Part shown: in pieces, positions 5,285 to 59,935 of the stretch
Position numbering within the stretch: the stretch's first letter is position 1
How the letters are laid out: every line of letters starts with the position of its first letter
Assembly (NCBI RefSeq): GCF_046119375.1
Contig: NW_027362764.1
Coordinates: 713,930,001 to 713,994,000, forward strand
Source of the DNA: Phyllobates terribilis
Taxonomy: Eukaryota
DNA length: 64,000 nt
Reading direction: 5' to 3'
Position numbers and translations under genes: made by a program
The notes under the pieces: generated by a model
Databases searched by the model: none
What the model saw: only the letters and a program-made list of their open reading frames with translations
Told to the model about the DNA's origin: nothing

Positions 5285-5446
5285 NNNNNNNNNNNNNNNN
5301 NNNNNNNNNNNNNNNNNNNNNNNNNNNNNNNNNNNNNNNNNNNNNNNNNNNNNNNNNNNNNNNNNNNNNNNNNNNNNNNNNNNNNNNNNNNNNNNNNNNN
5401 NNNNNNNNNNNNNNNNNNNNNNNNNNNNNNNNNNNNNNNNNNNNNN
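5285..5446. other. Assembly gap, 162 N
   Basis: Run of N directly after a Tc1 right TIR. Confidence 1.
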
Positions 5447-5882
5447 GCAAAAAGTAATCACAGAGACCCTGATTCCAGAGATCTATCACTTACTGGGCTG
5501 CATGCTGCAGTTTTGATAAAATCATAGTTTTATCTGCTGCAGATATAGCAGTTCTCTGAATGCTGAGCTCTCTATAAAACCACCCACACCACTGATTGGC
5601 TGCTTTCTGCCTATGCATAGTCTAAAGCTGCCAATCAGTGGTGGGTGCAGGGTTATACAGAGCTCATGTATATGGAGGACTACATAGTAGTCCTCTAAAG
5701 ATAATCTCCTGCTGATAAAACTATGATTTTATCAAAACCTACACTAAGCAGCCCAGTAAGTGACACATCGCTGGAATCAGGGTATCTGTCTCTACATGAT
5801 GCTGCTCTCAGATTAGGTGGCAAATTCTGTTCAACACAGTGGTTCTCATTACCAAACTGCTAACAAAGAGCATGGCGCTCAC

Positions 5883-16300: not shown

Positions 16301-16734
16301 AGAGAACTTGTCCCCAGGATTTTGCTGCCCCATTAGAGAAACAAAGTAGAGGCAGAAACCCTGATTCAATGCTAGGTTATTTGCTGCAGTTTTTTTTTTT
16401 TTATAAAACACAATTGTATCTGCTGCTGCTCTGCTAGTCTTCTCAATGCCATTCCGCTGCTTTGTAGTACTCCATATTCATGAGCCCTGGCCATCTCTGC
16501 CCCACAACACTAAGTGGCAGCTGTCTATGTATAGTATAGGCAGAAAGCAGTCAATGTCCCGGGCGGTGGTAGACGGAGCTCATTATTGAGAAGACTAGCA
16601 GAGCTGCAGCAGATAAACCTATTATCAAATCTACAGCAAGCAGCCCAGTAAGTGACAGCACTGGAATCAGGGTCAATTTCCCTATTGTGTGCTGCTCTCA
16701 GATTCAGAATCACAAACCTGGGGACACTTTCCCT
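16301..16734. mobile_element. T2-type MITE; family also at about 5447-5830 and 57513-58172
   Basis: TTAA + AGAG terminus; internal inverted CCCTGATTC / GAATCAGGG arms. Confidence 0.6.
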
Positions 16735-23615: not shown

Positions 23616-24194
23616 TATGTGCCAGCAAAGTGGTACCAGTTCTTCCAAGCCCCGCAATCTATGGACAGCCATTCACTCTGCTGCTTTGGCCAGCTTCATT
23701 ATCTTTAATAAAAACAAACCCCTTTAAAGCATCCAGCTGCAGCGGGTCCTTGCCCCCATTCTGTCAGCAATATTAGACTATAGAAGGTTTAATGGCGTTG
23801 TCCAGACTATTATCCCTATGAAGAGTGGATACCAGGATCTGTACCCTCACAGTCCACTTTTTCTGCTGTACCTCTATATTTTTATTTATATAAAATAACA
23901 AACAGACCAACAGAAATTCACCTCTCGGCCGTCCCACCAATCACCTGACGAGAGATGCATGCCTTTCAGGGGTAACTTTTCTGTTTATGGAGAGTGACGT
24001 GGTTGTGTAAGGAGACTTCTAGGCCACACAATGCTCCACTGGGAAATTAAATATACAAATGGTCTCTTCAGAGAGGAAGAGGACTTGAACTCTACAGCTC
24101 CACCTACTGGAAGTAGCAATCCCACAAGTCACTATCGACCCTTTAAACGAGCCTTGCAATAGGACTTAGGATAAAAGCCAAACCAAAATCATTA

Positions 24195-24235
24195 TTTACA
24201 GACACATGTTTTGCGGTGCTGCTCATCAGTGCAAA
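24195..24235 (-). ncRNA. Degenerate hammerhead of the same family (GAAA changed to AAAA)
   Basis: Minus strand reads TTTGCA-CTGATGA-GCagcaccGC-AAAA-CATGTGT-C-TGTAAA, inside a foldback repeat at about 24051-24415. Confidence 0.65.
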
Positions 24236-27200
24236 GCAAGAGATCTGATTTGGCTGTAGGAGAGGCTTCTGATTGGGGTCTAAGGGGTAATGTTTCTCCT
24301 TAGCCATGAGGCAAGGCTCATTAAAAGGTTCGATATTGACGTTTAGGATCGCTGCTTCCAATAGGTGGCACTAGAGTTCTTGTCCTCTTCCTCTCTGAAG
24401 AGGCAATTTGCATATGTAACTTCATTTTACCAGGAACAGTGCTGCGCAATACGTAGTGGCAGTCGCTGGTACTGCAGTTTTGTCCCGTTCATTTGAATAG
24501 CTGTATACAAAGGTATAGCCCCTACAAAACTTACAAAGTCACGTGTGATAAAAAAGGGCATGCAGCACTCGCCAGAGCATCGCAGCCCCTTCACAGAAAG
24601 CCATCCCCCTCATCAAGTCCTTTATAGTAGCAATGCATACGTATTTCCCTTTCCTTCCCTTGAAGACAGCCATCAGCATAACAGATGCAATCTAATCTGT
24701 AATATGGAAGAAATGCAGATCTGTATTACATACACTTATGGGAAAAAGGCCAATGCAAATAATGAAGCCCCATGCAAACAAATGAAGACACATGCATAGG
24801 TCCAGGACAGCAGCAAAGAAGCAATCGCCTGCAGCACATTTACTCCTTTCTCTTACTAAATCCCTACTGGATTGTATTTTTTGCACGTTATTAGATAGAA
24901 ATATTTATATTTGAATACATTTGTCGGGTGTTTCCATTTATACGAGACCTTACAAGATGAAGTCTTTGGATGAGAAGAAAAAAAAAAAAGACTAAAAACA
25001 TTCAATCACTACCCGTCATTCATTATTCAGTCATTATTTTTATTCTTCTGAAAAATAAGGTGATGTACACACTGGAATTTTCACATTGTCAAGAAATTAT
25101 AAAGAAAAAAAAAAAGTTTTTACTTTAGAATTACAAAAATCTATAAATGAAATATAACACAAGATTATGTTGCAAAGAGTTGATCCTGGAATGAGACAAA
25201 TATAAAATAAAAGTTTACAAAAAACATAAGAATTGAAAGTAGTATTTTTTTTTTTTTTTTTTCTGACAAAACTCCTAACAAACCAATACTGCAAAGAGTG
25301 AAAAGCCTGAACCGGGTGCAAGCGGCAGGAATGAAAGAATTTTATAGTTTTGCCCGTGAGATAGATTTAAAAGGAGTTGCCTCTGCGAAAGTCTATAGAA
25401 AAAGCCCTGTGTGCGGCGGGTGCAGATGTTGGTGTGCGGGTGTAGAGGTGCAGGCACACAACTTAATGGCGCATTATGGTTGCTCATGCTCAGCTCGGCC
25501 GCGCGTCTCCCGACCTGACGCAGAGACTCGTGTGCATATACAAAGAAGTTTGTCCACGTCAGGAGACAGTCAATCAGGCCGGTTATTGCGGACGGACTGT
25601 AAAGTATGGTAGTGTATAGTATAGGTGCAGGAGACCTCCCAATAATGTGCGCGACCTGATGGGCATCGGCCGTCACAATGTCATCAGCGCAGCTCTCGAT
25701 GTGACAACCACGGATCGCAATGCCACGAGAATATCGGATGTGAGAACGAGCCCTTGGGTATTAAAGCCCGAGGCTGTACTACTGAGAGATCCTGTTGACG
25801 TGTTGCCCTATATCACTCAGGTGCAGCATTCTTATAAACACCACGTGTGGATCCAAATCATCATCATATATACACACATTTATATGGATTTTAGGGGCAG
25901 TATAGTGTAAATTTTAATGGAGACAGTGCTTTAAAGTGTACATGTCATCAGAATCTCTGTAGGGCAGCCTCAGGCTTTAGGCCCGTAACTTCAAACAATG
26001 ATCACAAAAGAAAAAAACTCAGATGGGAGCTGTACTTTCAATAAACTGAAGAAATCAACAGTACATGGGAATATTAGAAACTTTGCAATATATTTTGAGA
26101 GTTCTGCTTCTTGTGCCACTTAGGAGCCACTTCTTTCGCTGCCTCCTAATCCTACCACACACTGCAGAAAAAAAAAAGAAACAGCTTAACTGACTGCCAG
26201 CACAGTGAGGAGTCAGATTACACCTCCTATTATAGTTCATGGAGAAGGGGTGTCAGAAAGCAGGCAGAGAGATTGTGCAGAGCTTTCTAACAAGTGTTTT
26301 ACGTCACTCCTGAGCTGGATTCACATCTACAGTGCTCAGTAGTGCTGTATAATGTCCCCCATGCTGCTGCTTCTGTCTGTGATGTATCTCGCTCTGCTGT
26401 GATGTGTATGGGAGACATCATAGTAGCTCCGAGTCAATTTTAATAGCCTGCAGAGGTGATACCTGGTAAAAAATGCAGAATACTCGTATAATGGCCAGAG
26501 CTCGTGTTATTCCTCATGAATATAGAGTATTCTGAAAAAAGTTACTTGAAAGTACAGTTACCGATTAAAAGTTTACAAAAAAAAAGTTATAGTCATAAAC
26601 CTTATTAGAGGAGTCTGATTTGATAGAGGGAATTGGTTCAGGATCTTCATCTTTTGGGCAGAAGGGAGAGAAATTATAAAGAGCGACTCTCTCTGGAGGA
26701 CCCGTCCTCCATCACAGACACAACCCATTGATTTGAATGGACACTATGTAATGCTTTATTTCCCCATTGGAGGCACTGCAGGGAAAGTGGACACTTACCG
26801 CCCGGTTTTCGCCTAGCTCGCTGGTGGACTCAATCGGAGAACTATGCGAGACCCATCTATCAAATATGGGATCTCCAAAGCAGAGAACCCTTTTAAGCAT
26901 TAAATGGGTTGCGTAGATTTTTATTGTGGTAGCAATATATATATTAATACCATTGGCAGTTAGATATTTATTCATTAAAGGGGGTCTCCGGAGCTACTCA
27001 CTTCGACATAGGGGAGGTGAGCAATGCCGAGGACACCACATCTATAGATACCTGTTTCGACGCATGAATATATGACCAACAGGCATGGTCTACCTGTCCT
27101 ATTTCATGATGAAGAAGTGAGCGGCGTCGGAGAAGCACTTTTTGAACCCTGTTGAGGTCTGATGTGTCCCAGACTTGCTGAGCTCGATACCAGAAGGAAC

Positions 27201-34450: not shown

Positions 34451-34784
34451 CCGAACACAGCAACGTACGGGAGGCTGGGCTGATAGCAGAGAACAACAGA
34501 GTAGGCACTATCAAATTAGCCCAATTCCTGTTATTATTTTATCTATTGCACCTATTATTTTTCGTCTTAACGTGGACTTATCGGAATAAGAACTTGTTAT
34601 TTGTGAGGCAAGTAGTAGTTTTATTTCAAGGGATTTTCCACTTTCAGGAAAGTGTGTAAAGTATGTAAAATAACATGCAGGTGGAAGCCTGGAACTCTAG
34701 CGCCACCTATTGGAAGTAATCCTACAAGTCACCATCGACTCTTGCCCCATAACTTTTAGGCTAAAAGCCAAACCAGACACTGGA

Positions 34785-34829
34785 TTTGCAGACACATGTT
34801 TTGGGGTGTTTGCCGCTCCTCAGTGCAAA
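34785..34829 (-). ncRNA. Degenerate hammerhead of the same family (GAAA changed to AAAA)
   Basis: Minus strand reads TTTGCA-CTGAGGA-GCGGcaaacaCCCC-AAAA-CATGTGT-C-TGCAAA, inside a repeat at about 34675-35240. Confidence 0.65.
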
Positions 34830-37130
34830 GCAACAGATCTGATTTGGCTGTATGAGGGGCTTCTGACTGTGGTCTAAGGGGGAACACTGCTCTACTTATG
34901 GAGAGTGACAAGTCAGTGTAAGGAGACTTACAGGCCATGCAATGTTCTTCTGGGATGGAAGAAGGAATAGTGCATGGCTTATAAGTCTCCTAACACTGGC
35001 ACGTCACTCTCCATAAGGAGAAATGTAACCCCTTATATGAGAGGCCTCTGACTGGGGTCGAAGGGTTAACGTTTCTTTTGGAGAGTGATCTACCGGTGGA
35101 ATTAGACTTATAGGCCATGCAATGTTCTTCTGGGAAGGAGGGAGGAGCATTGCAAGGCCTATAAGTCTCCTTACACTGAGTTGTCATTCTCTAAAAAAAG
35201 AAACATTACCCCTTAGACCCCAGTCAGACGCCTGCATACGACTTTAATAGTTTTAAATGAATTGCATTTTTTAGGGATACATATGACATAACCAAAGAAC
35301 AGCAATTCTGGCATATTAGTGTGTGGCAACATTCACTTAGCAGAATAAATAATGCCGCTTATTAAAAGTTCAAAAGACTTGTACGAATGTGTCGGGTTAC
35401 CAACTTGATTTTCTATTTTCTTTTTTCGGACAACTTATCAAAGACAATAATTTAATGACATATTAGAAAACTATAATAAATGATTGAGATTGGAAGTGAC
35501 GCATGGCTGCAGTCCGTACTACTGATATACCAAGGCAGCTGCCTTTACTGTCAACTGTAAAATGATGATAATAAGGCTTTGTTCACACATGTTTTTTTTA
35601 CGTCACAAATCTGCAGCAAAACTGATCTCTGGCAGGAAATCAGCTGCGTCAAAAACGCTGGTTTAGCTGCGTTTTTTTCCCACTGTCTTTCTGTCTCTAT
35701 TTATGCATGTACATAAAGATCCGTGAAAAAAAAAAGAGAACCCAATTCTATTTTGCCATCAAAACTGCTGAAAAAACGCGGATGCAAATTTTGGTGCTTT
35801 TTTTTTCACCACCCATTACTTCCTATGGGTGAAAAAACGCTGAAAGAAGTGACATGCTCTGTTTTCCAAAAACCCTACAAAAAAAGAAAAAATAACATGA
35901 TGTGTGAACAGAGAATTCTGGTTTCTCATAGACTTTGCTGGTACTGCAAAACGTAGCTGAAAATTTGTATAAAAATCTACAGCAAAAACCGCTGAAAAAC
36001 CCAACATGTGTGAACGTAGCCTTACAGTCACAATAACCTGTACAGGTTTCTTCAACATCAAAAAAAAAATTAAAAATAAATAATCAGACCCATCACATTT
36101 TCTTATTACAAAGAAAAAAAGCCGTATTTTTATGGATGGTCCTGGAATTTCTGGATGGTTGCCAACCCTAAAACGTAGGAATACCAATATATATTTATAT
36201 TTATTTAATGTACACTCTACATTTTTTTAATTCTCCTATGGGATTTCAACCTGGAATCAGGTGATCTCGGGTACAGTGCAGAGCAACCACGTCACAGTGA
36301 ACAATATGGTGACTTAGGGCGCATCTAAGAAATAGCAGTTGGGCGTCATGTGTGTTACACAGCCGGCACCCACTGTGCGCTCCGTGCCAAACACGAGCAC
36401 TGGACGTATACAGTGAACTCAGCACGGGCAACATGATGAAGAGCGGAGACATAAGTGTAGGTTAAAGTGGAGCTAGGGTGGTGTAAGGGGAGATCGATGG
36501 AAATGGAGGACTACAACATGGCGAGCTTATTGGGGTCCTGGCAGAGGATGAATGACCAAAAGGTGTTAGGAGGTTGGTCCAGAAGAGGTGGTAAGGGGTT
36601 TCCTCATCTTATAAAAGTAATGGCATAACACCATGGCATGCCATCAATTTATGGTCCTGGAGGTCCTACCCCCGATCCAGAGAATGAGGGGAGTGTGGCG
36701 CACTTTGCTCCCTTCTAAGTTTTACCGACACAGCGACCCTACTGACCACCTGACTGAAAATATTAGTGCCTTGGACATATTCTGAGTTGTAGTTTTATTC
36801 CTTTATTGTCCAAAGTGCATCATCTTAGCAATGTTGCGGCCAATAAACTGCCTTTTTCAGGGAACTGCACTTGTCCCATTACTGCAGGGTGCCATTTTGC
36901 AGAGGAAAAGCTGAATGGGGAGCAGCACTAGACCAGATCCATCACTGTCTTCTTTACTCTTGGACCCACATAGTCATAAAGTTATGGCGTACCTTAGTCC
37001 TGCGCCTTCACATTAGGAGATGGGTGCGGCTGACTTAATTACTCCACTTACCTGGGACTGCAGACACCCACCCTTCCCATATTGAAAATATACAGCAGAA
37101 ACAATTGTGCTGTGTTTGAAACCACTTTAA

Positions 37131-50072: not shown

Positions 50073-51489
50073 GTAAGTGGTTTCCACTAATATTCCTTAT
50101 CCCATCACAGGACAAGAACTTCGTCTTCATGTTATAACATCAACCGTAATGAGGTCGTCACGTCATGGATGAGAACTGTCACGTGAGTGATTTATTTACA
50201 CATGGGTGTATCATTATCTGATGGAGGAATATATGCCTCCTGACGCCATGGCTCCACAGCAAAAGAACTTGATTGATATTTGCAAAAGCACGTTCACATT
50301 ACAATACAGCGTGATATTTCCCCCGACTTAAAGAATTGCCATCATTTACACTTTTTTTTTCTCATAAATCAATAGTACGCCTGAAAATAAGAAACTTTGT
50401 AATGTATCTTAATAGAGAAATCCACTTCTTTCTCCTCCTGGACTGATCATTCGTTCTCAAAATACAGACCTTCCCATTACTGAGATAGGAGATGACAATT
50501 GGTGCTCATAAAGTTCTATGGAGAACTGTAAGTGTTTTTGGAGAACTTGCAGCAGAATGTCCATGTATCTCTAGCTCCTCCCTCTTCTCCATAGAATCTT
50601 CTAAGCACCAACGTGTATCTCCTATTTCAGTAATTGAGAGTGAAAGATCAGTCCAGGAGGTGAAAGAAGCAGATTTCTCTCATAAAATATATTACAAAAT
50701 TGTGTATTTTCTTGTGTACTATTGATTTATGAAATAAAATTTAAAACAACAGTTACTCTTTAGATTTTTGGGGACAAATGGCATTGCCTGTGTATATGAG
50801 ATATCATTATAAGCAATTTTGCAATAGTATTAAATTTAATGTGACAAATTAAACATATTGTCCGTCCATAATGACTGAAGATATTGCATGTGACATTGCA
50901 GAATCACAAGTGAATATAACAAGTGATATGACATTGTGGAGCTCTGGCCTAAGGGTGATAGTCATTTAGTAAGTAGGAAAATAATATTTCATTGGCTAAA
51001 CAAACCTCTCACTCTATATTGCAGCTTGATGTACTATTGACTTGTGCTGACAAGTGGCTCTATGCCCTACATGTATTGAGGTACACTATGTGGACAAAAT
51101 TGTTGGAACACACATCTTTATCATCGAGTTCAGGTTAATCATTTAGTCTCATTGCTCCTGGTGTATAATGTCCGGCAAACAAAAAGGTGTCCAGCTCCAG
51201 GATCCGAGCAATCGAAACGCGTTGCTGAAAATGTCCTAGTAACAGCTATTCAATTGCACCTGTACCTCACTTTTATTTATTCATTCCTTCATTTTTGGAT
51301 GGAGTAATTTTTATGATTTTTTTCTAATAAAGTTGCTATTTTAAAATGTTCCTGTTTCCTCGGATCCTGGAGCTGGATACCTTTTTGTTTTCTTCAGTAT
51401 TATTGGCGTCTGGTCAGGACGAATTTCCGTGCTCCATTCTTCGGATTGCTCAGGTGAGCTGGCTGAAACTTTTTATATACTAAGTATAA

Positions 51490-52670
51490 TGTCCAGCCCC
51501 CTTGTCCCCGGTGTATAACATCTGACTCCATTGCCCTCGGTGTATAACTTCCGGCCCCCTTATCTCCGGTGTATAACATCTGGCTCCTCCATTGCCCTCG
51601 GTGTATAAAATCCGGCCCCATTGCCCTCGATGTATAACATCCGGCCCCATTATCCTCGGTGTATAACATCCGGCCCCATTATCCTCGGTGTATAACATCC
51701 GGCCCCATTATCCTCGGTGTATAACATCCGGCCCCCTTGTTCCCGGTGTATAACATAAGACCCCATTGCCCTTGGTGTATAACATCCGGTCTCCTTGTCC
51801 TCGGGGTATAACATCTGGCTCCATTGCCCCCAGGTTATAACATCTGGCCCAATTGCCCCCGGGGTATAACATCCAGCCCCACCGCCCTTGGTGTATAACA
51901 TCCAGCTACATTTGCCCCCAGTATATACTGTAACATCCGGCTTCATTGCCCTTGGTCTATAACATCCAGCTCCATTTGCCCCAGTGTCTAATATCTGGCT
52001 TCATTGCCCCCAGTGTATAACATCAGGCCCCATCTCCCTCAATGTATAACATCCGGCCCCATTGCCCCCGGTGTATAACATTCGGCCCCATTGCCTTCGG
52101 TGAATAATATCTGGCCCCATTGCCCTCGGTGTATAACATCCGGCCCCGTAGCCTTCGGTGAATAATATCTGGCCCCATTGCCCTCGGTGTATAACATGTG
52201 GCCTATTTGCCCCCAGTATGTAACAACCGGCTTCGTTGCCCCCCGAGTATAACATCCAGCTCCATTTGCCCCCAATATATAACATCCGGCTTCGTTGCCC
52301 CTGGTGTATAACATCCAGCTCCATTTGCCCCCAATATATAACATCCGGCTTAGTTGCCCCTGGTGTATAACATCCAGCTCCATTTGCCCCAGTATATAAC
52401 ATCCGGCTTCATTGCCCCTGGTGTATAACATCCAGCTCCATTTGCCCCCAATATATAACATCCGTCTTAGTTGCCCCTGGTGTATAACATCCAGCTCAAT
52501 TTGCCCCAGTATATAACATCCGGCTTCGTTGCCCCTGGTGTATAACATCCAGCTCCATTTGCCCCAGTGTCTAATGTCTGGCTTCATTGCCCCCAGTGTA
52601 TAACATCCGGCCCCATCGCCCTCGATGTATATCATCTCGTCCCTCGCCCCCCAGTGTATAACATACGGCC
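51490..52670. repeat. Minisatellite, unit about 30 bp (GTGTATAACATCCGGCCCCATTGCCCTCG)
   Basis: Directly visible degenerate tandem array. Confidence 0.9.
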
Positions 52671-54065: not shown

Positions 54066-54259
54066 ATGGGCAATGACATTGAACGTTTCCTTGGCTATGT
54101 GAACGATGGTCTTCTCTGCTGCATATGTCGGGATGTTCTTGAGCGCCCACTACAAGCCCCCTGTGAACATGCCTTCTGTGCTTCATGTATACCTGTATAC
54201 AATAACTGTCCTGAGGATCGGCAAACCCTAGCTGTCACCGATCTAAAGGCATTACACAG
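54066..54259 (+). CDS. RNF41/RNF151-like RING E3 ligase, coding exon 1 (RING domain, shortened)
   Basis: MGNDIERF..C-x2-C..PCEHAFC-x2-C..CPEDR resembles RNF41 (MGYDVTRF..PHCEHAFC..CPVDR); acceptor at 54057, donor AG|GTATT. Confidence 0.85.
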
Positions 54260-54294
54260 GTATTCTTTTGGGCAATTTCTGATTTTGTTCTTTA

Positions 54295-54650
54295 GGCTGT
54301 GTGCCCACGATGCGTTTTTGGTTCGTTTTTTGGTGCGGATTTGCAGAAACGCATTGCATACCTTATCCCATGACTTCCTATGACATTCTGCAAGTTCTGT
54401 GCACATGGTCAGGATTTTTTCTGCGCAGATTTTACTCCCAGAAAAAATATGGACATGACCAATTCTTGTGCGTTTCTGCATGCGTATTTGCCTATACAAT
54501 GCATTGGAAAAACGCATGTCAAATACGCATCAAAAACGCATCAAAATGCGTCAAAAACGCATGTAAAAACCGCATGCGTTTTTCTGCCAAGGAGATGCAG
54601 AAATGCTCAGGAAAATTTCTGCTTCATTTCTGCATCGTGGGCACTAAGCC
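54295..54650. mobile_element. PIF/Harbinger-type MITE; similar elements at 29524-29669, 35575-36021, 62010-62206, 62210-62532 and about 63.0-63.3 kb
   Basis: TTA + GGCTGTGTGCCCACGATGC ... GCATCGTGGGCACTAAGCC + TTA. Confidence 0.7.
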
Positions 54651-54964
54651 TTACAGTCTCCTATGCTTAGACTGCATTTTTTCAGGAGACTACAAATTCC
54701 TGTCTTTGTTTCTTAGCAATAATGTAATATTCACCCCTAGTCAAAACGGTTATTTACCCCGCCGCCCATACTTCAGACATAGCCGTAACCCTCACGGTGT
54801 ATTGTACGCAGGGTAATTGCACACAATGTCTGAATGACTTCTAATGTGATGTTTCTGCTAAAAAATTATTGAATGGTTCAACATAGTTATAAAATAAAAG
54901 TGGGAATAGGTGTCATCAACATATAGACGGCCCTGCACAAAAATCTGCTGATGGATTGTCAAAT

Positions 54965-55294
54965 AGAGGCAAGGCCAAGAGGAGACAAATATATCTGAAG
55001 GGCTGTCACAGTGTAGAGGGATCATCCTCATTTGCACATGGAAACACTAGAGGCAATGGGATGAAACTGAAAGGGAGAAGATACAGATTAGATATTAGAA
55101 AACACTTTTTGACAGTGAGGGTGATCAATGAGTGGAACAGGCTGCCACGAGAGGTGGTGAGTTCTCCTTCAATGGAAGTCTTCAACCAGAGGCTGGACAG
55201 ACATCTGTCTGAGATGATTTAGTGACTCCTGCATTGAGCAGGGGGTTGGACCAGATGACCCAGGAGGTCCCCTCCAACTCTACCATTCTATGAT
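54965..55294 (+). mobile_element. CR1 LINE 3' end
   Basis: RGNGMKL...LDIRKHFLTVRVINEWNRLP (ORF2 C-terminus) followed by a 3' UTR ending in ATTCTATGATT. Confidence 0.85.
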
Positions 55295-56030
55295 TAAGAG
55301 GAGGGGATCTGAGGAACCCCAACAGTAAGGGAAAGAGGACAGGAAGAAGAGCCAGGAAATGATAGTGAAGGAGCGGTCAGAGGAAAAGGAGGAGAACCAA
55401 GAACGAACAGTGTCCTTAAGGCCGATAGAGCGGAGCATAGTGAGGAGGAGCTGGTGATCCACAGTGTCGACTACAGCAGAGATCCAGGAGAATCAGCAGG
55501 GAGTAGTGACCATTAGATTTAGCTGTTAGTAGATCATCAGAGACTTTAATAAGGGCAGTTTCAGTAAAGTGTAAAGAGCAGAAACCGGATTATAAAGGGT
55601 CAAGGAAGAGTATTATCTGAGAGATAGCGGATTCGATGGGAGTGGACCAAGGGTTCCAGGAGATTAGAGACCAGTCTGTAGTTAGCAGCACAGTTCTGGT
55701 CTAGTAGGATGTTTTTTTTAGTAAAGGGGTTATGATGGCATGTTTGAATGAAGAGGGAAAGATACCGGAAGAAAGAGAGAGGTTAGGTATTTTAGTTAGG
55801 TAGGGAGTGACAGCCGGGAAGTTGGACTGAAGGAGATGTGAGGGAATAGGGTCATTGATGCAGGTTGTAAGGCGAGATGAAGCCAGGAGCCTGGTCACTT
55901 CTTTTGGGACAGGTTCAAAGGTGGAAAGTGAGCTTGAGGTGTGGGAGGGAAGAGGATCCAGGTTCTGGGGGGATTGTGCAAAATTGTCCTGACAGATATG
56001 GTTGAAATGAGTCATTTACTATGATGTGTC
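55295..56030 (-). mobile_element. L2-type LINE reverse transcriptase fragment
   Basis: DPIPSHLL...NLSLSSGIFPSSFKHAIITPLLKK and [26 protein letters not shown]. Confidence 0.8.
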
Positions 56031-56106
56031 TGGTGGAAGGATTGAGTGAGATGATAATACTACACGAGTTCATTCTATTCTATAATATGCTTCTGTATTT
56101 ATCTAG

Positions 56107-56246
56107 GTACATGCGGAACGAGCTGAGCAGACTTCAGATCCAGTGTAAAAATGACAGAAGTGGCTGCGAGATGGTTTGTTCTCTGGGGTCCATAGATAAA
56201 CATGAGAAGGAGTGTGAATACGGTTGTATGTCCTGTATAAATGCTG
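56107..56246 (+). CDS. RING gene coding exon 2 (YMRNELSRLQIQCKNDRSGC...HEKECEY)
   Basis: TRAF/SIAH-type zinc finger as in RNF41/RNF151; phase 2 to 1 with canonical splice sites. Confidence 0.85.
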
Positions 56247-56327
56247 GTAAGTATCTAATAAACTCATTATGAACACTGTCCACCCTTCCATTCTATGTCA
56301 CGTTCTACATGAGCTTTCTGGTGTTAG

Positions 56328-56487
56328 GCTGCCCTGTCCAGTTTGAGAGAAGACATCTGGATAGTCACCTGGTGGTGTGTGAACATCGGAGCCGGGAATG
56401 CCCCAATGGCTGTGGTTATGGCATCCTAAGTGCTGAAGATCTACAGCATAACTGTATTGCACTCAGAACAGAGCTAGAACTTCTAAG
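56328..56487 (+). CDS. RING gene coding exon 3 (GCPVQFERRHLDSHLVVCEH..CPNGCG..HNCIALRTELELL)
   Basis: Second zinc-finger module; TTAG acceptor, AG|GTAAT donor, phase 1 to 2. Confidence 0.85.
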
Positions 56488-57010
56488 GTAATAACCTTTA
56501 CATATACAAAGCATTAGGGTATGTTCACACTGTGCCTTAGCCTACCATAGGTGGCTCTCTTGAGAGCTTACATTTGAAGCCCTGGAAAACAGAATTCGGA
56601 TGATTGCGCTCATGAGGCCATTGACTTTAATAATGCAGTTACATTGTGCTTTGTAGGATATAATTTTCAGCAGTGTCCACCTATTTCTGGTGGGCTCCAA
56701 GACGCAGTACCTGCCTCAAATAGCCAGATAAGGACGTAAATTATGTCCGATGGAGCACAATGTGATTCTGCATTACTAAAGTCAATAGTAAGTAAGTGCA
56801 AACGTCCATATCCAAGGCTTTGGATGCAAGCCCCAACGAAGCCAATGACGTGCCATTCGAGGGCTTTCTGCCGGAGAACACAGGAGCACTCTGCCAAATG
56901 TGTGCTCCTGTGTATGGGAGCGACGGCCAAGATGGCCTTGTAAGCATGATTTGGCCGACAGCCATCTAATGTGTAGGGCGGCCTTTACTGTACTGATCTC
57001 TCGTCTCTAG

Positions 57011-57131
57011 ATCTGAAGTGATATACAGAGTCAAAGAAGCCAAGCTGGAGATGGACTCTAGGCTGGACTCACAGAGACGACACATGGTCCTTAAAGGGAG
57101 TCTTTACAGGCAGAGACAGAAGAGCTAAAAG
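57011..57131 (+). pseudogene. RING gene coding exon 4 with frameshift and in-frame TAA at 57126-57128
   Basis: SEVIYRVKEAKLEMDSRLDSQRRHMVLK.S is followed by an off-frame stretch ending in TAA; the shifted frame reads LQAETEELK up to the donor at 57132. Confidence 0.75.
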
Positions 57132-57610
57132 GTATATTTTGTGTCTGCTTCCATTTTAGCTGTACAAAAATGTAATATAAATATCTGAAGACATTTAATA
57201 GGGATCTCTTTAGGATCCAAAAGAGGATTCTCTTTTTGGTGAGTGGAGGTAAATGATCCAGTTGACCAAAACAACTGTTCAGTTTCTCTATAGCATCACA
57301 AGACATGTGAAGTATTACACTGTGCCTAATGAGATGAGGCTGCTTATGGAAAGCATGGACTCACAGGTCTATCCAGGGCAAGAAATACGCTTTGGTAACC
57401 AAGAACAGTCACCTAATAGACTTCTCTTCACCCAAAACTGTGAAGTGAGTACTTTGGACCCCTGTTCCAGTGAATGTTGTGGATAAATGTTGAATATGGG
57501 AAACACTTTTAAAAGGAATCAGCAGGTTTTTGCTATGTAATCTGAGAGCAGCATGAGGAAGGGGTAGAGACCCTGATTCCAGTGATGTTTCATTGTTTTT
57601 ATAAAATCAC

Positions 57611-57866
57611 AAGGAGAAACGTTACCCCCTTAGACCTCAGTCCAGAGCCTCTCACCTAGCCAAATCACTTATCATACTTTGCACTGATGAGGGCCAACAG
57701 CCCGAAACACCGTGTCTGCAAATTGAGATTCTGACTTGGCTATTATCCCAAGTCATATTGCACTACTCGTTAAAGGGTTGATTGTGACTTGTAGGATTGC
57801 TGCTTCCAATAGGTGGCAGTAGAGAGTACAAGTCCTCTTTTTCTCTAAAGAGGCAATTTGCATATT
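57611..57866 (+). mobile_element. Hammerhead-bearing dispersed repeat (Penelope-like pLTR / retrozyme type), nested in a TTAA MITE
   Basis: Shares CCCCTTAGACC...CTGATGAG...CTTCCAATAGGTGGC...GAGGCAATTTGCATAT with the repeats at about 24.0-24.4 kb and 34.7-35.2 kb. Confidence 0.6.
57678..57722 (+). ncRNA. Type I minimal hammerhead ribozyme with intact catalytic core; predicted cleavage after GUC at 57716
   Basis: TTTGCA-CTGATGA-GGGC caaca GCCC-GAAA-CACCGTGT-C-TGCAAA: 6-bp helix I, complete CUGAUGA and GAAA core, 4-bp helix II, short near-palindromic helix III. Confidence 0.85.
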
Positions 57867-58244
57867 AATAAAATCAGTGTTTTATCAGCTGGAGATTATC
57901 ACTATAGGACTAGCTGTTGCGTGCCTCCTGGTCCAAGCACACCCTCATCACTGATTGGCAGCTTTCTGTCTATATTGACAAAGCAACCTATCAGTGTTGT
58001 GGGCGGGGTTATAGAGCTCCGCATTTGAGCACTGCTAGATCTGCAGCAGAGATAACTCATTGTATCACAACTGCTGCACCCAGTAAGTGACACATCGCTG
58101 GAATCAGGGTCTCTGTTCCTACATTATGCTGGTGCCAGATTAGAAAGAAAAAAAACTGCTTACAAATTCCCTTTAAATAAAAAAAATAAAAAAATAGCTC
58201 CAACCTGTCAGCTTTTAGCTCTAAAAGACTAGTGTATTCATAGT

Positions 58245-58650
58245 ACAGTCATGGCCAAAAGAAGAAACTGACACAAATTTTGGATTTCACAAAGTTTGTT
58301 GCTTCAGTTTTCTTAGAACTTTTAGTCAGATGTTTCTATGGTTACATTAGTACAGTCGTCGGCATTTTAGATGGTTTTGAACCTTAATTGACAAATATGT
58401 TACACTTTTGCAAAGAATCAATCATGACCCTTATTTTTCCAGGCTTCTTAAGCCCTTTGCCCTCAAAGCTAGATATCAGCTTCTGGGCCAAATCCTGACT
58501 GATGAGGATAGCCCATTTTTGCCTAATCAGTGCTTGGAGGCTAACCCTATTTCTGTGTTTTTGTTTGTCCACCCACTTTTTGGAGATTGACCACAGGTTC
58601 TCAATAGGATTAAGATACACAGAGTTTCCTGGACATAGACTCGAGACAAG
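58245..58650 (-). mobile_element. Tc1 remnant (TIR plus transposase C-terminus)
   Basis: TA + CAGTCATGGCCAAAAG terminus; minus-strand LNPIENLWS...LAQKLISS. Confidence 0.65.
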
Positions 58651-59554
58651 GGAGTACATTTACCAAGTTTTTCATGTTGAACTGGACGCAAGATGTAATA
58701 ATGGCTGCAGAGCGTAATAGGTTTGTTTTTATTTCACCTCTCCATTGCGGAGATATTAGCAAAGTATTTGGTGGTACTTAATGAGTTAACTTTGTTAAAG
58801 CCAAGTGGGTGTCATCAGACAGCAACTCATTCATGGAGAAAGTCATCCTCCGGTAGCAACACCCACTTGGCTTAACTAAAGGTAACTCATTAGGCGACAC
58901 AGTTTGATTGCAAATATCTCTGCAACAGAGGCGAAATAAAAAATAATAATATTTTATTCCACTCTGCAGCCATTATTACATTGTGTGTCTGGTTCACCAT
59001 GAAAAGTTTGGTCATCTAAGTAGTTAAAAAGTGTTTTTGGTTCAACAAAACTTTGCTAACTTGAGTAATTGCCATCAAATAATAAATCCATCAGTACTTA
59101 CTCGAGGAATCCTCGTCAGTCTTGCACCATCGCTTCCAGACTCTGTTTTACATCTCTACAAGCATCATGTGCTATCACTCATGTGACCACTGCAGCCAAT
59201 CACTATAACTTCTGCTGAGAAGTAATTGAATTGTCAGGAAGCAATGATGCAGGATAGACAGGGATGTAACCAAATAAGTTATGGTTGGTTTTGTTATTTT
59301 ATAACCTTTACTGTCTTTCACAAAAACATTTTGAACCCAGAAAAAAACATATAATTATAAAATATCTTGCTATGCTGAGAATTAGAAAAAATAAGAGATA
59401 TTAATCAGTCCAGAGTTTGGAACAAGAAATGGCAAAGGCAGATCTGTACTTTTAGGTTCAGATTGAATGGCTGCATTTTAATTTTACTCAATGAGATCAC
59501 CTAAAAATTTAGCATTTTGATAGTTTCTGCACGTCATGGCTTTGTTTGTTCCAG

Positions 59555-59794
59555 AGGCAGGTATCGCAGCTCATGTCAGATGTGCGGACTCTGATGGCTT
59601 CAGAAAGACAGATCCGGCAGGACCTGGAGCCGACAAACCTGGAGCCGACAAACCTGGAGAAGCGAGAACTGATGGTACTACTGAAAGGATTACAGCCAGA
59701 ATGCCGAACAAACAAGGATGAAGTACAGAAAACTTCCAGTGACCGTTCAACGCTCCCTGAAAGCTTTAAAGAGAAGAACCAGAGAGGTCTCTAA
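59555..59794 (+). CDS. RING gene last coding exon, coiled coil (RQVSQLMSDVRTLMASERQIRQDLE...); untranslated if the upstream TAA is real
   Basis: TTTGTTCCAG acceptor, phase 0; heptad-like sequence; contains a 15-nt tandem duplication (LEPTN twice). Confidence 0.7.
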   Translation, partial: RQVSQLMSDVRTLMASERQIRQDLEPTNLEPTNLEKRELMVLLKGLQPECRTNKDEVQKTSSDRSTLPESFKEKNQRGL

Positions 59795-59935
59795 TCTCAT
59801 CAGGATGTTATGGAGTTATTTCCAAGCAGCATGTAGCATCTAGTCAGTTTTGACCCCTATAGCCACATTTATTTTAGAAAGCCTGGGAAGAAAACAAGTC
59901 CCTTCAGGAAGAGAATGCAGTTTATTTTAAGTTAA

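What the first reader, a model, noticed from the sequence alone, without database searches (positions are those of the whole stretch)
57678..57722. Intact self-cleaving hammerhead ribozyme in sense orientation in the last intron of the RING gene
Seen: TTTGCA CTGATGA GGGC-caaca-GCCC GAAA CACCGTGT C TGCAAA holds every invariant hammerhead nucleotide (C3 U4 G5 A6 G8 A9, G12 A13 A14, A15.1-U16.1) and a GUC cleavage triplet, with a 6-bp helix I and a 4-bp helix II. Helix III is only 3 bp and nearly self-complementary (ACAC-C-GTGT). Established: minimal type I hammerheads with palindromic helix III are typical of Penelope-like elements, retrozymes and newt satellite 2, and often cleave as dimers. 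Inference: the RING pre-mRNA could be cut at 57716 before the last intron is spliced, which would silence the gene or give a truncated, non-polyadenylated 3' end just after the exon that carries the premature stop.
Basis: partly seen in the sequence, partly recalled or inferred. Interest (0 to 1): 0.78.

Follow-up and report, generated by a model that had tools for sequence, protein, structure and literature searches.

The report
Retrozyme-type hammerhead repeat in an intron
The 45-base self-cutting "hammerhead" RNA motif is real and intact, but it is one copy of a very abundant frog jumping-gene repeat of a well-known kind that landed in the last intron of a RING-finger gene, and the gene's RNA is still spliced normally across it.

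Summary
Observation confirmed. 57678-57722 (+) holds a complete canonical type I hammerhead: helix I 6 bp, helix II 4 bp, all core bases, GUC site, weak near-palindromic helix III. A descriptor finds it once in the window and never in 300 shuffles.

It is not a gene-specific element. It lies in a 254-bp repeat unit (57610-57863) with a target-site-duplication-like repeat, inserted into a MITE. Two decayed copies (G12 to A) lie elsewhere in the window. Near-identical copies pile up to roughly 10^4 times single-copy depth in a DNA run. This is the amphibian retrozyme / Penelope-related hammerhead class. This scan has already noted many such repeats elsewhere in this frog genome.

RNA contigs confirm that the motif is sense-oriented in the last intron (57132-59554) of an expressed RING/TRAF-zinc-finger gene. 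The preceding exon ends with an in-frame stop (57126-57128). The same contigs show this intron spliced out in three runs, so the gene is not silenced.

Folding gives the monomer a 0.4-1.6% chance of forming all three helices, and a dimer is favoured. There is no second copy in the transcript. Published amphibian monomers cleave slowly, and slow intronic ribozymes do not block splicing. Cleavage itself could not be tested, because only contigs were available. Ordinary; low interest.

The parts
57678..57722 (+). Type I hammerhead ribozyme motif. Helix I is 57678-57683/57717-57722, helix II 57691-57694/57700-57703 with loop CAACA, helix III within 57707-57715. The predicted cut is after C57716.
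57657..57742 (+). Predicted extension of helix I into a long imperfect arm: UAGCCAA...UUGGCUA, with an internal loop holding UAC at 57675-57677 next to helix I
   Evidence: Minimum-energy and centroid folds of the whole unit. The UAC aligns with loop 1 of the HH9 model.
57610..57863 (+). 254-bp copy of the hammerhead-bearing repeat unit (GC 0.449, 4 CpG). The 3' boundary is uncertain by about 6 bp.
   Evidence: Blast and alignment to two other copies in the window. The interruption of a MITE defines the ends. Composition.
57597..57609 (.). Left copy of the target-site-duplication-like repeat, TTTTATAAAATCA (the core ATAAAATCA is identical to the right copy)
   Evidence: An uninterrupted MITE copy has a single TTGATAAAATCA.
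57864..57876 (.). Right copy of the target-site-duplication-like repeat, ATTAATAAAATCA
57856..57863 (+). Octamer ATTTGCAT at the 3' end of the unit, also present in the arm at 24317-24415. Function not tested.
57508..57592 (.). Left part of the host MITE (inverted repeat of 58088-58177)
   Evidence: Contigs of other MITE copies skip 57585/57592 to 57867 (table 5).
57865..58177 (.). Right part of the host MITE. Other copies lie at 5447-5824 and 16501-16720.
57132..59554 (+). Last intron of the RING/TRAF-zinc-finger gene (GT..AG). It lies entirely downstream of the stop codon.
   Evidence: RNA contigs X9 record 25 and X10 record 4. Splice-site letters.
57011..57131 (+). Penultimate exon, with in-frame TAA at 57126-57128, 3 nt before the donor site
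59555..59900 (+). Last exon (runs beyond 59900). The old reading frame stays open to 59794.
24050..24301 (-). Decayed copy of the same unit: helix II deleted, G12 to A, helix III ACATGTGT. An inverted partial arm lies at 24317-24415 (+).
34695..34882 (-). Decayed copy of the same unit: G12 to A, helix II mispaired

Best explanation
The motif is the ribozyme of a dispersed, single (monomeric, about 254 bp) copy of an abundant amphibian hammerhead repeat. This is the non-LTR retrozyme class, related to the terminal repeats of Penelope-like elements. The copy was retro-inserted, with a 9-13 bp target duplication, into a MITE that already sat in the last intron of an expressed RING/TRAF-zinc-finger gene. 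That intron is a 3'-UTR intron. Shown here: the ribozyme core is intact, the repeat membership, the insertion anatomy, the sense orientation, and normal removal of the intron. Inferred: as a lone copy its weak helix III makes it a slow or inactive self-cleaver, because the family is built to cut as a double hammerhead formed between tandem copies. Splicing therefore outruns any cleavage, and the copy is a neutral passenger whose core has simply not yet been hit by CpG decay.
For: 1. Complete canonical metazoan type I architecture (helix I 6 bp, helix II 4 bp, short near-palindromic helix III), as described for animal repeat-borne hammerheads in PMC4209133.
2. The motif sits in a repeat unit with two more copies in the same 64 kb. 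Both have lost G12 through CpG to CpA changes.
3. The unit interrupts a MITE and is flanked by ATAAAATCA direct repeats. Other MITE copies lack it.
4. Summed contig depth over the motif is about 236,000 against 14-25 on single-copy flanks in DNA run X5. The only common variants are 57711 C>T and a 1-base deletion at 57625, so near-identical copies are very numerous.
5. RNA contigs of three runs join the exons across this intron with no mismatches.
6. Partition-function modelling gives helices I+II a probability of 0.15-0.6, but all three helices in a monomer only 0.004-0.016. A dimer forms an 8-bp extended helix III and is 8.6 kcal/mol better than two monomers.
7. Literature. Axolotl retrozyme monomers self-cleave only 6-22% in one hour, while dimers cleave efficiently (PMC7229834). 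In Xenopus about 43% of retrozyme copies lie in introns, and 8 of 9 dimer constructs gave no cleavage in vitro (bioRxiv 10.64898/2026.07.22.740005). Slow intronic ribozymes leave splicing unaffected (PMC10919898, PMC2995048).
Against: No direct measure of cleavage was possible. Every run on offer is kept as contigs, which cannot show RNA ends. This copy keeps both CpGs of the core while its neighbours lost theirs. That could mean youth (favoured) or constraint, and no orthologous locus was available to tell them apart. The UAC next to helix I and the CAACA loop 2 resemble the tertiary-contact elements of fast natural hammerheads, so the monomer could be faster than the nearest-neighbour model suggests. 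Only a 254-bp unit is seen here, so I could not show that it belongs to the roughly 330-bp tandem families noted elsewhere in this genome. Depth summed over contigs is not a true copy number.
Confidence: 0.85

Rival explanations
1. One reading: the ribozyme cuts the RING pre-mRNA at 57716 before the last intron is spliced. This would silence the gene or give a truncated, non-polyadenylated transcript, making it a regulatory, exapted intronic ribozyme comparable to HH9 in RECK or the CPEB3 ribozyme.
For: Intact core in sense orientation inside the transcribed intron. Both core CpGs are retained while two neighbouring copies decayed. The best Rfam resemblance is to the intronic HH9 family. The intron lies downstream of the stop codon, so cutting it would change only the 3' end. 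Amniote intronic hammerheads are thought to have been domesticated from just such amphibian-type retroelement ribozymes (PMC6155905).
Against: Mature, correctly spliced mRNA across this intron is present in three RNA runs. It is a single copy of a family that needs dimers, and the monomer fold with helix III has probability 0.016 or less. The HH9 score is far below the gathering score (22.5 against 52). The sequence is one of very many near-identical copies, so its intactness is explained by youth. In Xenopus such copies in introns are commonplace.
Confidence: 0.05
2. The unit is not a retrozyme monomer but a fragment of an autonomous Penelope-like element: a solo terminal repeat (pLTR) or a 5'-truncated or 5'-inverted insertion.
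For: The copy at 24050-24415 has a head-to-head inverted partial arm, an arrangement often seen with Penelope-like insertions (my own knowledge). Xenopus retrozyme families are sister to pLTRs of Penelope-like elements. The unit is flanked by a long target duplication.
Against: The ribozyme has the canonical 6-bp/4-bp architecture with a real helix III. The minimal Penelope type described in PMC4209133 has a long helix II and essentially no helix III. No reverse-transcriptase or GIY-YIG reading frame adjoins any of the three copies, although I did not search the whole window for one. The distinction is partly semantic if retrozymes derive from pLTRs.
Confidence: 0.12
3. A chance match to the hammerhead consensus, or an artefact of assembly consensus.
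For: No Rfam family reaches its gathering score. The HH9 E-value would be about 0.5 if scaled to the whole window.
Against: 0 of 300 shuffles give any match to the structural descriptor. The motif is shared, in decayed form, by two other copies in the window. Contigs from an independent DNA sample (X5) and from RNA runs carry the same letters over the core, at 95% likeness or more, at very high depth.
Confidence: 0.01

Closest known systems
Metazoan non-LTR retrozymes / amphibian satellite-2-type hammerhead repeats (newt satellite 2; axolotl Rtz331/Rtz353; Xenopus retrozyme families)
   Same: Canonical type I hammerhead with 6-bp helix I, 4-bp helix II and a short near-palindromic helix III that favours dimers. 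Low-GC unit of a few hundred bp. Very high copy number in an amphibian genome. Target duplication longer than 4 bp. Dispersed monomers common in introns (PMC7229834; bioRxiv 10.64898/2026.07.22.740005).
   Different: Here there is a single 254-bp copy, not a tandem array, so no unit bounded by two cleavage sites and no route to a circular RNA from this locus. Helix III is ACAC-C-GUGU (odd-length, so a C-C mismatch in the dimer). Sequence relation to the named families could not be tested.
Minimal hammerheads in the terminal repeats of Penelope-like elements (Cervera and De la Pena 2014, PMC4209133)
   Same: Repeat-borne, type I, built to act as dimers, low activity as a single motif, thousands of copies in frog genomes (about 9,000 in X. 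tropicalis).
   Different: Penelope-type minimal motifs have a larger helix II with a bulge and practically no helix III. This one has the canonical architecture and no adjoining coding region.
Rfam RF02275 Hammerhead_HH9 (conserved intronic hammerhead of amniote RECK and related genes)
   Same: Type I, intronic, sense-oriented. Same core and same layout: UAC 5' of helix I, loop 2 CCAA-A-G, 3-bp helix III. It is the best-scoring Rfam family.
   Different: The score of 22.5 bits is far below the gathering score of 52. HH9 is a single-copy, deeply conserved element, whereas this is one of very many young repeat copies with no evidence of conservation.
Sm-alpha SINE-like hammerhead repeats of Schistosoma
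   Same: Short non-autonomous retroelement carrying a type I hammerhead with helix I / loop 2 contacts.
   Different: Different phylum. No tRNA-like part or clear polymerase III boxes were found here (ARAGORN negative).

Membership tests
Hammerhead ribozyme, type I (structural definition) | Conserved core C3 U4 G5 A6 N7 G8 A9 / G12 A13 A14 / A15.1-U16.1 / non-G at position 17 | tested here: met
   Read directly. Descriptor hit. Core aligned to the HH9 model.
Hammerhead ribozyme, type I (structural definition) | Three helices around the core, with helix I open-ended | tested here: met
   Helix I 6 bp, helix II 4 bp, helix III 3 bp with a triloop. Helices I and II appear in the centroid folds, but helix III is not in the minimum-energy fold.
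Hammerhead ribozyme, type I (structural definition) | Self-cleavage 3' of position 17, giving 2',3'-cyclic phosphate and 5'-OH ends | not testable with these tools
   Only contigs were available, and they show no RNA ends.
Rfam hammerhead families (clan CL00010, best RF02275 HH9) | Bit score at or above the family's gathering score | tested here: not met
   No hit at gathering thresholds. HH9 scores 22.5 against 52.
Metazoan non-LTR retrozyme | Canonical type I hammerhead inside a short (about 170-400 bp), low-GC, non-coding repeat unit | tested here: met
   254-bp unit, GC 0.449, with no ORF of note.
Metazoan non-LTR retrozyme | Head-to-tail tandem copies, so that two ribozymes delimit a unit-length RNA | tested here: not met
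   Single copy at this locus. The other two copies lie more than 20 kb away on the other strand. Tandem arrays of hammerhead repeats elsewhere in this genome are only reported by unchecked scan notes.
Metazoan non-LTR retrozyme | High copy number and insertion with target-site duplications longer than 4 bp | tested here: met
   Depth about 10^4 times single copy in DNA run X5 (rough, not a copy number). ATAAAATCA duplicated at both ends of the insertion into a MITE.
Metazoan non-LTR retrozyme | Expression as linear and circular unit-length RNAs | not testable with these tools
   Family words are abundant in the RNA runs, at 940-2,600 summed depth against 5-18 on RING exons. Contigs cannot show circles or ends.
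Penelope-like element terminal repeat (pLTR) | Direct repeats flanking an RT plus GIY-YIG reading frame, with a minimal hammerhead (long helix II, vestigial helix III) | tested here: not met
   No coding region adjoins the unit. The ribozyme architecture is canonical, not minimal.
Domesticated intronic ribozyme (HH9 / CPEB3-like) | Single-copy element conserved at an orthologous intron across species | tested here: not met
   Multi-copy repeat. Orthologous loci were not available, so conservation itself was not tested.

The most novel reading that the evidence does not exclude
This young, still intact sense copy is being co-opted. Slow or factor-assisted cleavage could occur, possibly as a trans double hammerhead with the abundant family RNAs. 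Cleavage in the 3'-UTR intron of a RING/TRAF-zinc-finger gene that has just acquired a premature stop would tune how much polyadenylated mRNA is made. That would be an early stage of the domestication that produced HH9-type intronic ribozymes in amniotes.
Probability: 0.04. Interest if true: 0.6.

Novelty: new member of a known kind. Interest (0 to 1): 0.17.

Why it matters
It matters little on its own. It is a clean, well-delimited example of a retrozyme-type hammerhead copy caught inside a transcribed intron, with an intact core, a dated insertion (into a MITE, with target duplication) and direct evidence that the host intron is still spliced. Such copies are the raw material from which the conserved intronic hammerheads of amniotes are thought to derive. 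A genome-wide comparison of intact sense and antisense intronic copies in this frog could test whether sense-oriented active ribozymes are selected against in genes. The result also warns that an intact hammerhead in an intron, in a genome with thousands of such repeats, is not evidence of gene regulation.

Tried and rejected
- Rfam at gathering thresholds over the whole window found nothing. Only a permissive local scan gave a sub-threshold HH9 match.
- A loose pattern (CTGATGA...GAAA...TC) gives 6 matches against about 1.9 expected, so it is uninformative. I replaced it with a structural descriptor.
- No run of this organism is kept as raw reads and none is on record as RNA. Cleavage ends, strand and level could therefore not be read. 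The 'RNA?' runs were accepted as RNA only because single-copy intron bins have zero depth while exons are covered and joined.
- No single contig from the independent DNA sample spans the motif uniquely. The contigs break in the repeats (X5 record 18 ends at 57546), so locus-specific confirmation of the letters was not obtained, only family-level agreement.
- Look-up of earlier scan notes by sequence was blank, which means nothing according to the operators.
- ARAGORN found no tRNA-like part in 57400-58200, so a tRNA-derived SINE origin was dropped.
- I considered comparing fold probabilities with the HH9 consensus.
- The EMBO Rep 2010 paper on intronic hammerheads is not held. Its content is cited only through reviews that are held.
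- The spliced gene model was translated and searched exon by exon, by reference.
- The N run at 5285-5446 was left untouched.

Full report
**1. The observation**

Every invariant hammerhead position is present:
- C3 U4 G5 A6 (U7) G8 A9 at 57684-57690
- G12 A13 A14 at 57704-57706
- A15.1 (57707) paired with U16.1 (57715)
- C17 at 57716, followed by helix I

Helix I is 6 bp, and helix II is 4 bp closed by G10.1-C11.1 with loop CAACA. Helix III can form only A-U, C-G, A-U around a CCG triloop.

I wrote a descriptor requiring the core boxes, helix I of at least 4 bp, helix II of at least 3 bp, helix III of at least 2 bp and a non-G at position 17. It finds this single site on both strands of the 64-kb window and none in 300 dinucleotide-preserving shuffles.

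Rfam gives nothing at its gathering thresholds. A permissive scan of 801 bases gives Hammerhead_HH9 at 22.5 bits (gathering score 52), E 0.0057, over 57668-57738.

**2. What it is part of**

Blast of 56901-58500 against the window and an alignment show the motif inside a repeat unit. Two more copies lie on the other strand, at 24050-24301 (78% identity) and 34695-34882 (73% identity).

Both other copies have lost the ribozyme:
- The CpG that contains G12 has become CpA (CCCGAAAC to CCCAAAAC or CGCAAAAC).
- Helix II is deleted or mispaired.
- Helix III reads ACATGTGT, which is what CpG decay of a palindromic ACACGTGT-like sequence would give.

The copy at 24 kb also has an inverted partial arm at 24317-24415.

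The flanks of our copy belong to a different element, a MITE. Its ends at 57508-57592 and 58088-58177 are inverted repeats, and other copies lie at 5447-5824 and 16501-16720. An uninterrupted MITE copy reads ...TTGATAAAATCATAGTTTTATCAGC. In our locus that site is split. TTTTATAAAATCA (57597-57609) precedes the unit, and ATTAATAAAATCA (57864-57876) follows it and runs on into GTGTTTTATCAGC.

The hammerhead unit (57610-57863, 254 bp, GC 0.449, four CpG) is therefore an insertion into the MITE, with a target duplication of 9 to about 13 bp. Contigs from other MITE copies that skip from 57585-57592 to 57867 confirm that the MITE normally lacks this insert (tables 5 and 5c).

**3. Abundance**

The reads tool could lay only Logan contigs. 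In DNA run X5, which comes from a different sample and study than the best holders, single-copy bins have depth 14-25. The bin holding the motif has 173,747, and position 57711 has 236,436.

The tool warns that summed contig depth is not a copy number. The order of magnitude still means that copies at least 95% alike are very numerous. Within the motif the only difference reaching 10% of depth is 57711 C>T, the CpG in helix III. Just upstream, a 1-base deletion at 57625 is common.

So the intact core, including the extra C in ACAC-C-GTGT, belongs to a young, abundant subfamily and is not special to this locus. Earlier notes of this scan describe the genome as a frog's. They list many hammerhead repeats of about 280-350 bp, tandem and dispersed, and two follow-ups filed them under the retrozyme/Penelope class. 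I used these notes as leads only.

**4. The gene context**

RNA contigs give the exon structure directly:
- X9 record 25 joins 56105-56245, 56327-56485, 57009-57129 and 59553-59900.
- X10 record 1 joins 54177-54257, 56105-56245 and 56327-56399.
- X10 record 4 joins 56955-57129 to 59553-59900.
- X13 record 8 joins 56415-56485 to 57009-57108.

Each junction shares two letters (or one) between the sides. Shifting by these gives canonical GT..AG introns, and the last intron is then 57132-59554.

Translated exon by exon, by reference, exon 1 carries a RING finger (zf-RING_UBOX 27.9 bits against a cut-off of 25.2; zf-C3HC4 25.9 against 21). Exons 2 and 3 show weak Sina/TRAF-type zinc-finger matches, and the best solved relative is a TRAF4 zinc finger. 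I did not build or search a joined coding sequence.

Phase bookkeeping shows that the frame runs from 54066 through exons 2-4 and meets TAA at 57126-57128, 3 nt before the donor site. The same frame would otherwise stay open in the last exon up to 59794. The stop is present in the RNA contig and in the independent DNA contig (X5 record 18), since no difference is listed there.

This makes the intron a 3'-UTR intron.

**5. Does it cut the pre-mRNA?**

Direct evidence is out of reach, because contigs cannot show RNA ends and no raw-read run was offered. Four lines of indirect evidence bear on the question.

- **Splicing.** The exon-exon junction across the intron is present, with no mismatches, in contigs of three runs from two studies. 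Single-copy intron bins have depth 0-3. The gene is therefore not silenced.
- **Folding.** With nearest-neighbour energies, helices I and II are well populated (P 0.15-0.61 in contexts of 45 to 601 nt). All three helices together reach only P 0.004-0.016. Two copies of the 71-nt RNA fold into a double hammerhead with an extended helix III (4 + 4 bp around a C-C mismatch). That dimer is 8.6 kcal/mol better than two monomers. In the whole unit, helix I extends into a long imperfect arm (57657-57742), and the unit folds better than shuffles (z = -2.5).
- **No partner.** No second same-strand copy lies in the transcript, so a cis dimer is impossible.
- **Literature.**
  - Canonical metazoan type I hammerheads have 6-bp helix I, 4-bp helix II and a short palindromic helix III. 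[quoted passage not shown]
  - Axolotl retrozyme monomers cleave 6% and 22% in one hour, while dimers cleave efficiently (PMC7229834).
  - Of nine Xenopus dimer constructs only one cleaved at 6 mM Mg2+, and about 43% of Xenopus retrozyme copies lie in introns (bioRxiv 10.64898/2026.07.22.740005).
  - Introns cut by a slow hammerhead are still spliced, and only fast ribozymes abort processing. This is from Dye et al. 2006 and Fong et al. 2009, as reported in PMC2995048 and PMC10919898.

From these I infer that polymerase needs to travel only about 1.8 kb from the ribozyme to the acceptor site. A monomer with a half-life of hours would therefore cut at most a few per cent of transcripts before splicing.

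**6. Comparison with what is known**

The thing works like, and most likely is, a dispersed monomer of an amphibian non-LTR retrozyme / satellite-2-type repeat. A recent preprint derives these from the terminal repeats of Penelope-like elements.

It meets these class features: canonical type I ribozyme, short low-GC non-coding unit, high copy number and a long target duplication. At this locus it does not meet the tandem arrangement that defines a functional retrozyme. Circular RNA could not be tested.

It differs from the minimal Penelope-type hammerhead, which has a long bulged helix II and no real helix III. It is not a member of Rfam HH9 by score, although HH9 is its nearest model. That fits the published view that amniote intronic hammerheads were domesticated from such amphibian-type retroelement ribozymes (PMC6155905).

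An ATTTGCAT octamer ends the unit (57856-57863). An earlier scan note proposes an snRNA-type promoter in the related 330-nt repeats. I checked only that the octamer is there.

**7. Verdict**

The functional inference of silencing or truncation of the RING transcript is contradicted for silencing and unsupported for truncation.

This is an ordinary, young passenger copy of a known kind of repeat. This scan has already met many copies of that kind elsewhere in the same genome. Novelty: a new member of a known kind. Interest is low.

The most novel reading still open is incipient exaptation as a 3'-UTR-intron ribozyme. I give it about 4%.

Noticed in passing
window 54066-59794 (+): The RING/TRAF-zinc-finger gene is expressed and spliced, yet its frame is closed by TAA at 57126-57128, 3 nt before the end of the penultimate exon. 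The same frame would stay open for 80 more codons in the last exon. The stop is in both the RNA contig and an independent DNA contig. The protein would be about 200 aa with RING and zinc fingers intact. The stop is too close to the last junction to trigger nonsense-mediated decay by the usual 50-nt rule.
   Followed up: partly
window 24050-24415: The decayed hammerhead unit at 24050-24301 (-) abuts an inverted partial copy of itself at 24317-24415 (+). This head-to-head fold-back arrangement is like the ones other scan notes report for this repeat family.
   Followed up: partly
window 51484-52669: A 29-bp minisatellite with about 40 copies and 74% matches. It produces a stack of spurious overlapping ORFs on the minus strand.
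   Followed up: partly
window 58387-58659 (-): Remnant of a DDE (Tc1/mariner-like) transposase reading frame in the same intron as the ribozyme (Pfam DDE_3, 19.8 bits, below the cut-off).
   Followed up: partly
window 56955-57129: One RNA contig (X10 record 4) begins 54-56 nt upstream of the penultimate exon's acceptor site and is still joined to the last exon. It could be a retained-intron fragment or an alternative start or acceptor.
   Followed up: no
window 57781-57795 and the matching places of the other copies: The unit holds a GGTTGATTGTGAC stretch (GGTTCGATATTGAC in the arm at 24.3 kb) that loosely recalls a polymerase III B box. Together with the terminal ATTTGCAT octamer it hints at an internal promoter. 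ARAGORN finds no tRNA-like fold.
   Followed up: partly
window 54197-55575: Intron 1 of the RING gene is filled with very high-copy repeats. Contig depth reaches 650,000 in the DNA run and 30,000 in the RNA runs, far above the hammerhead unit itself.
   Followed up: no
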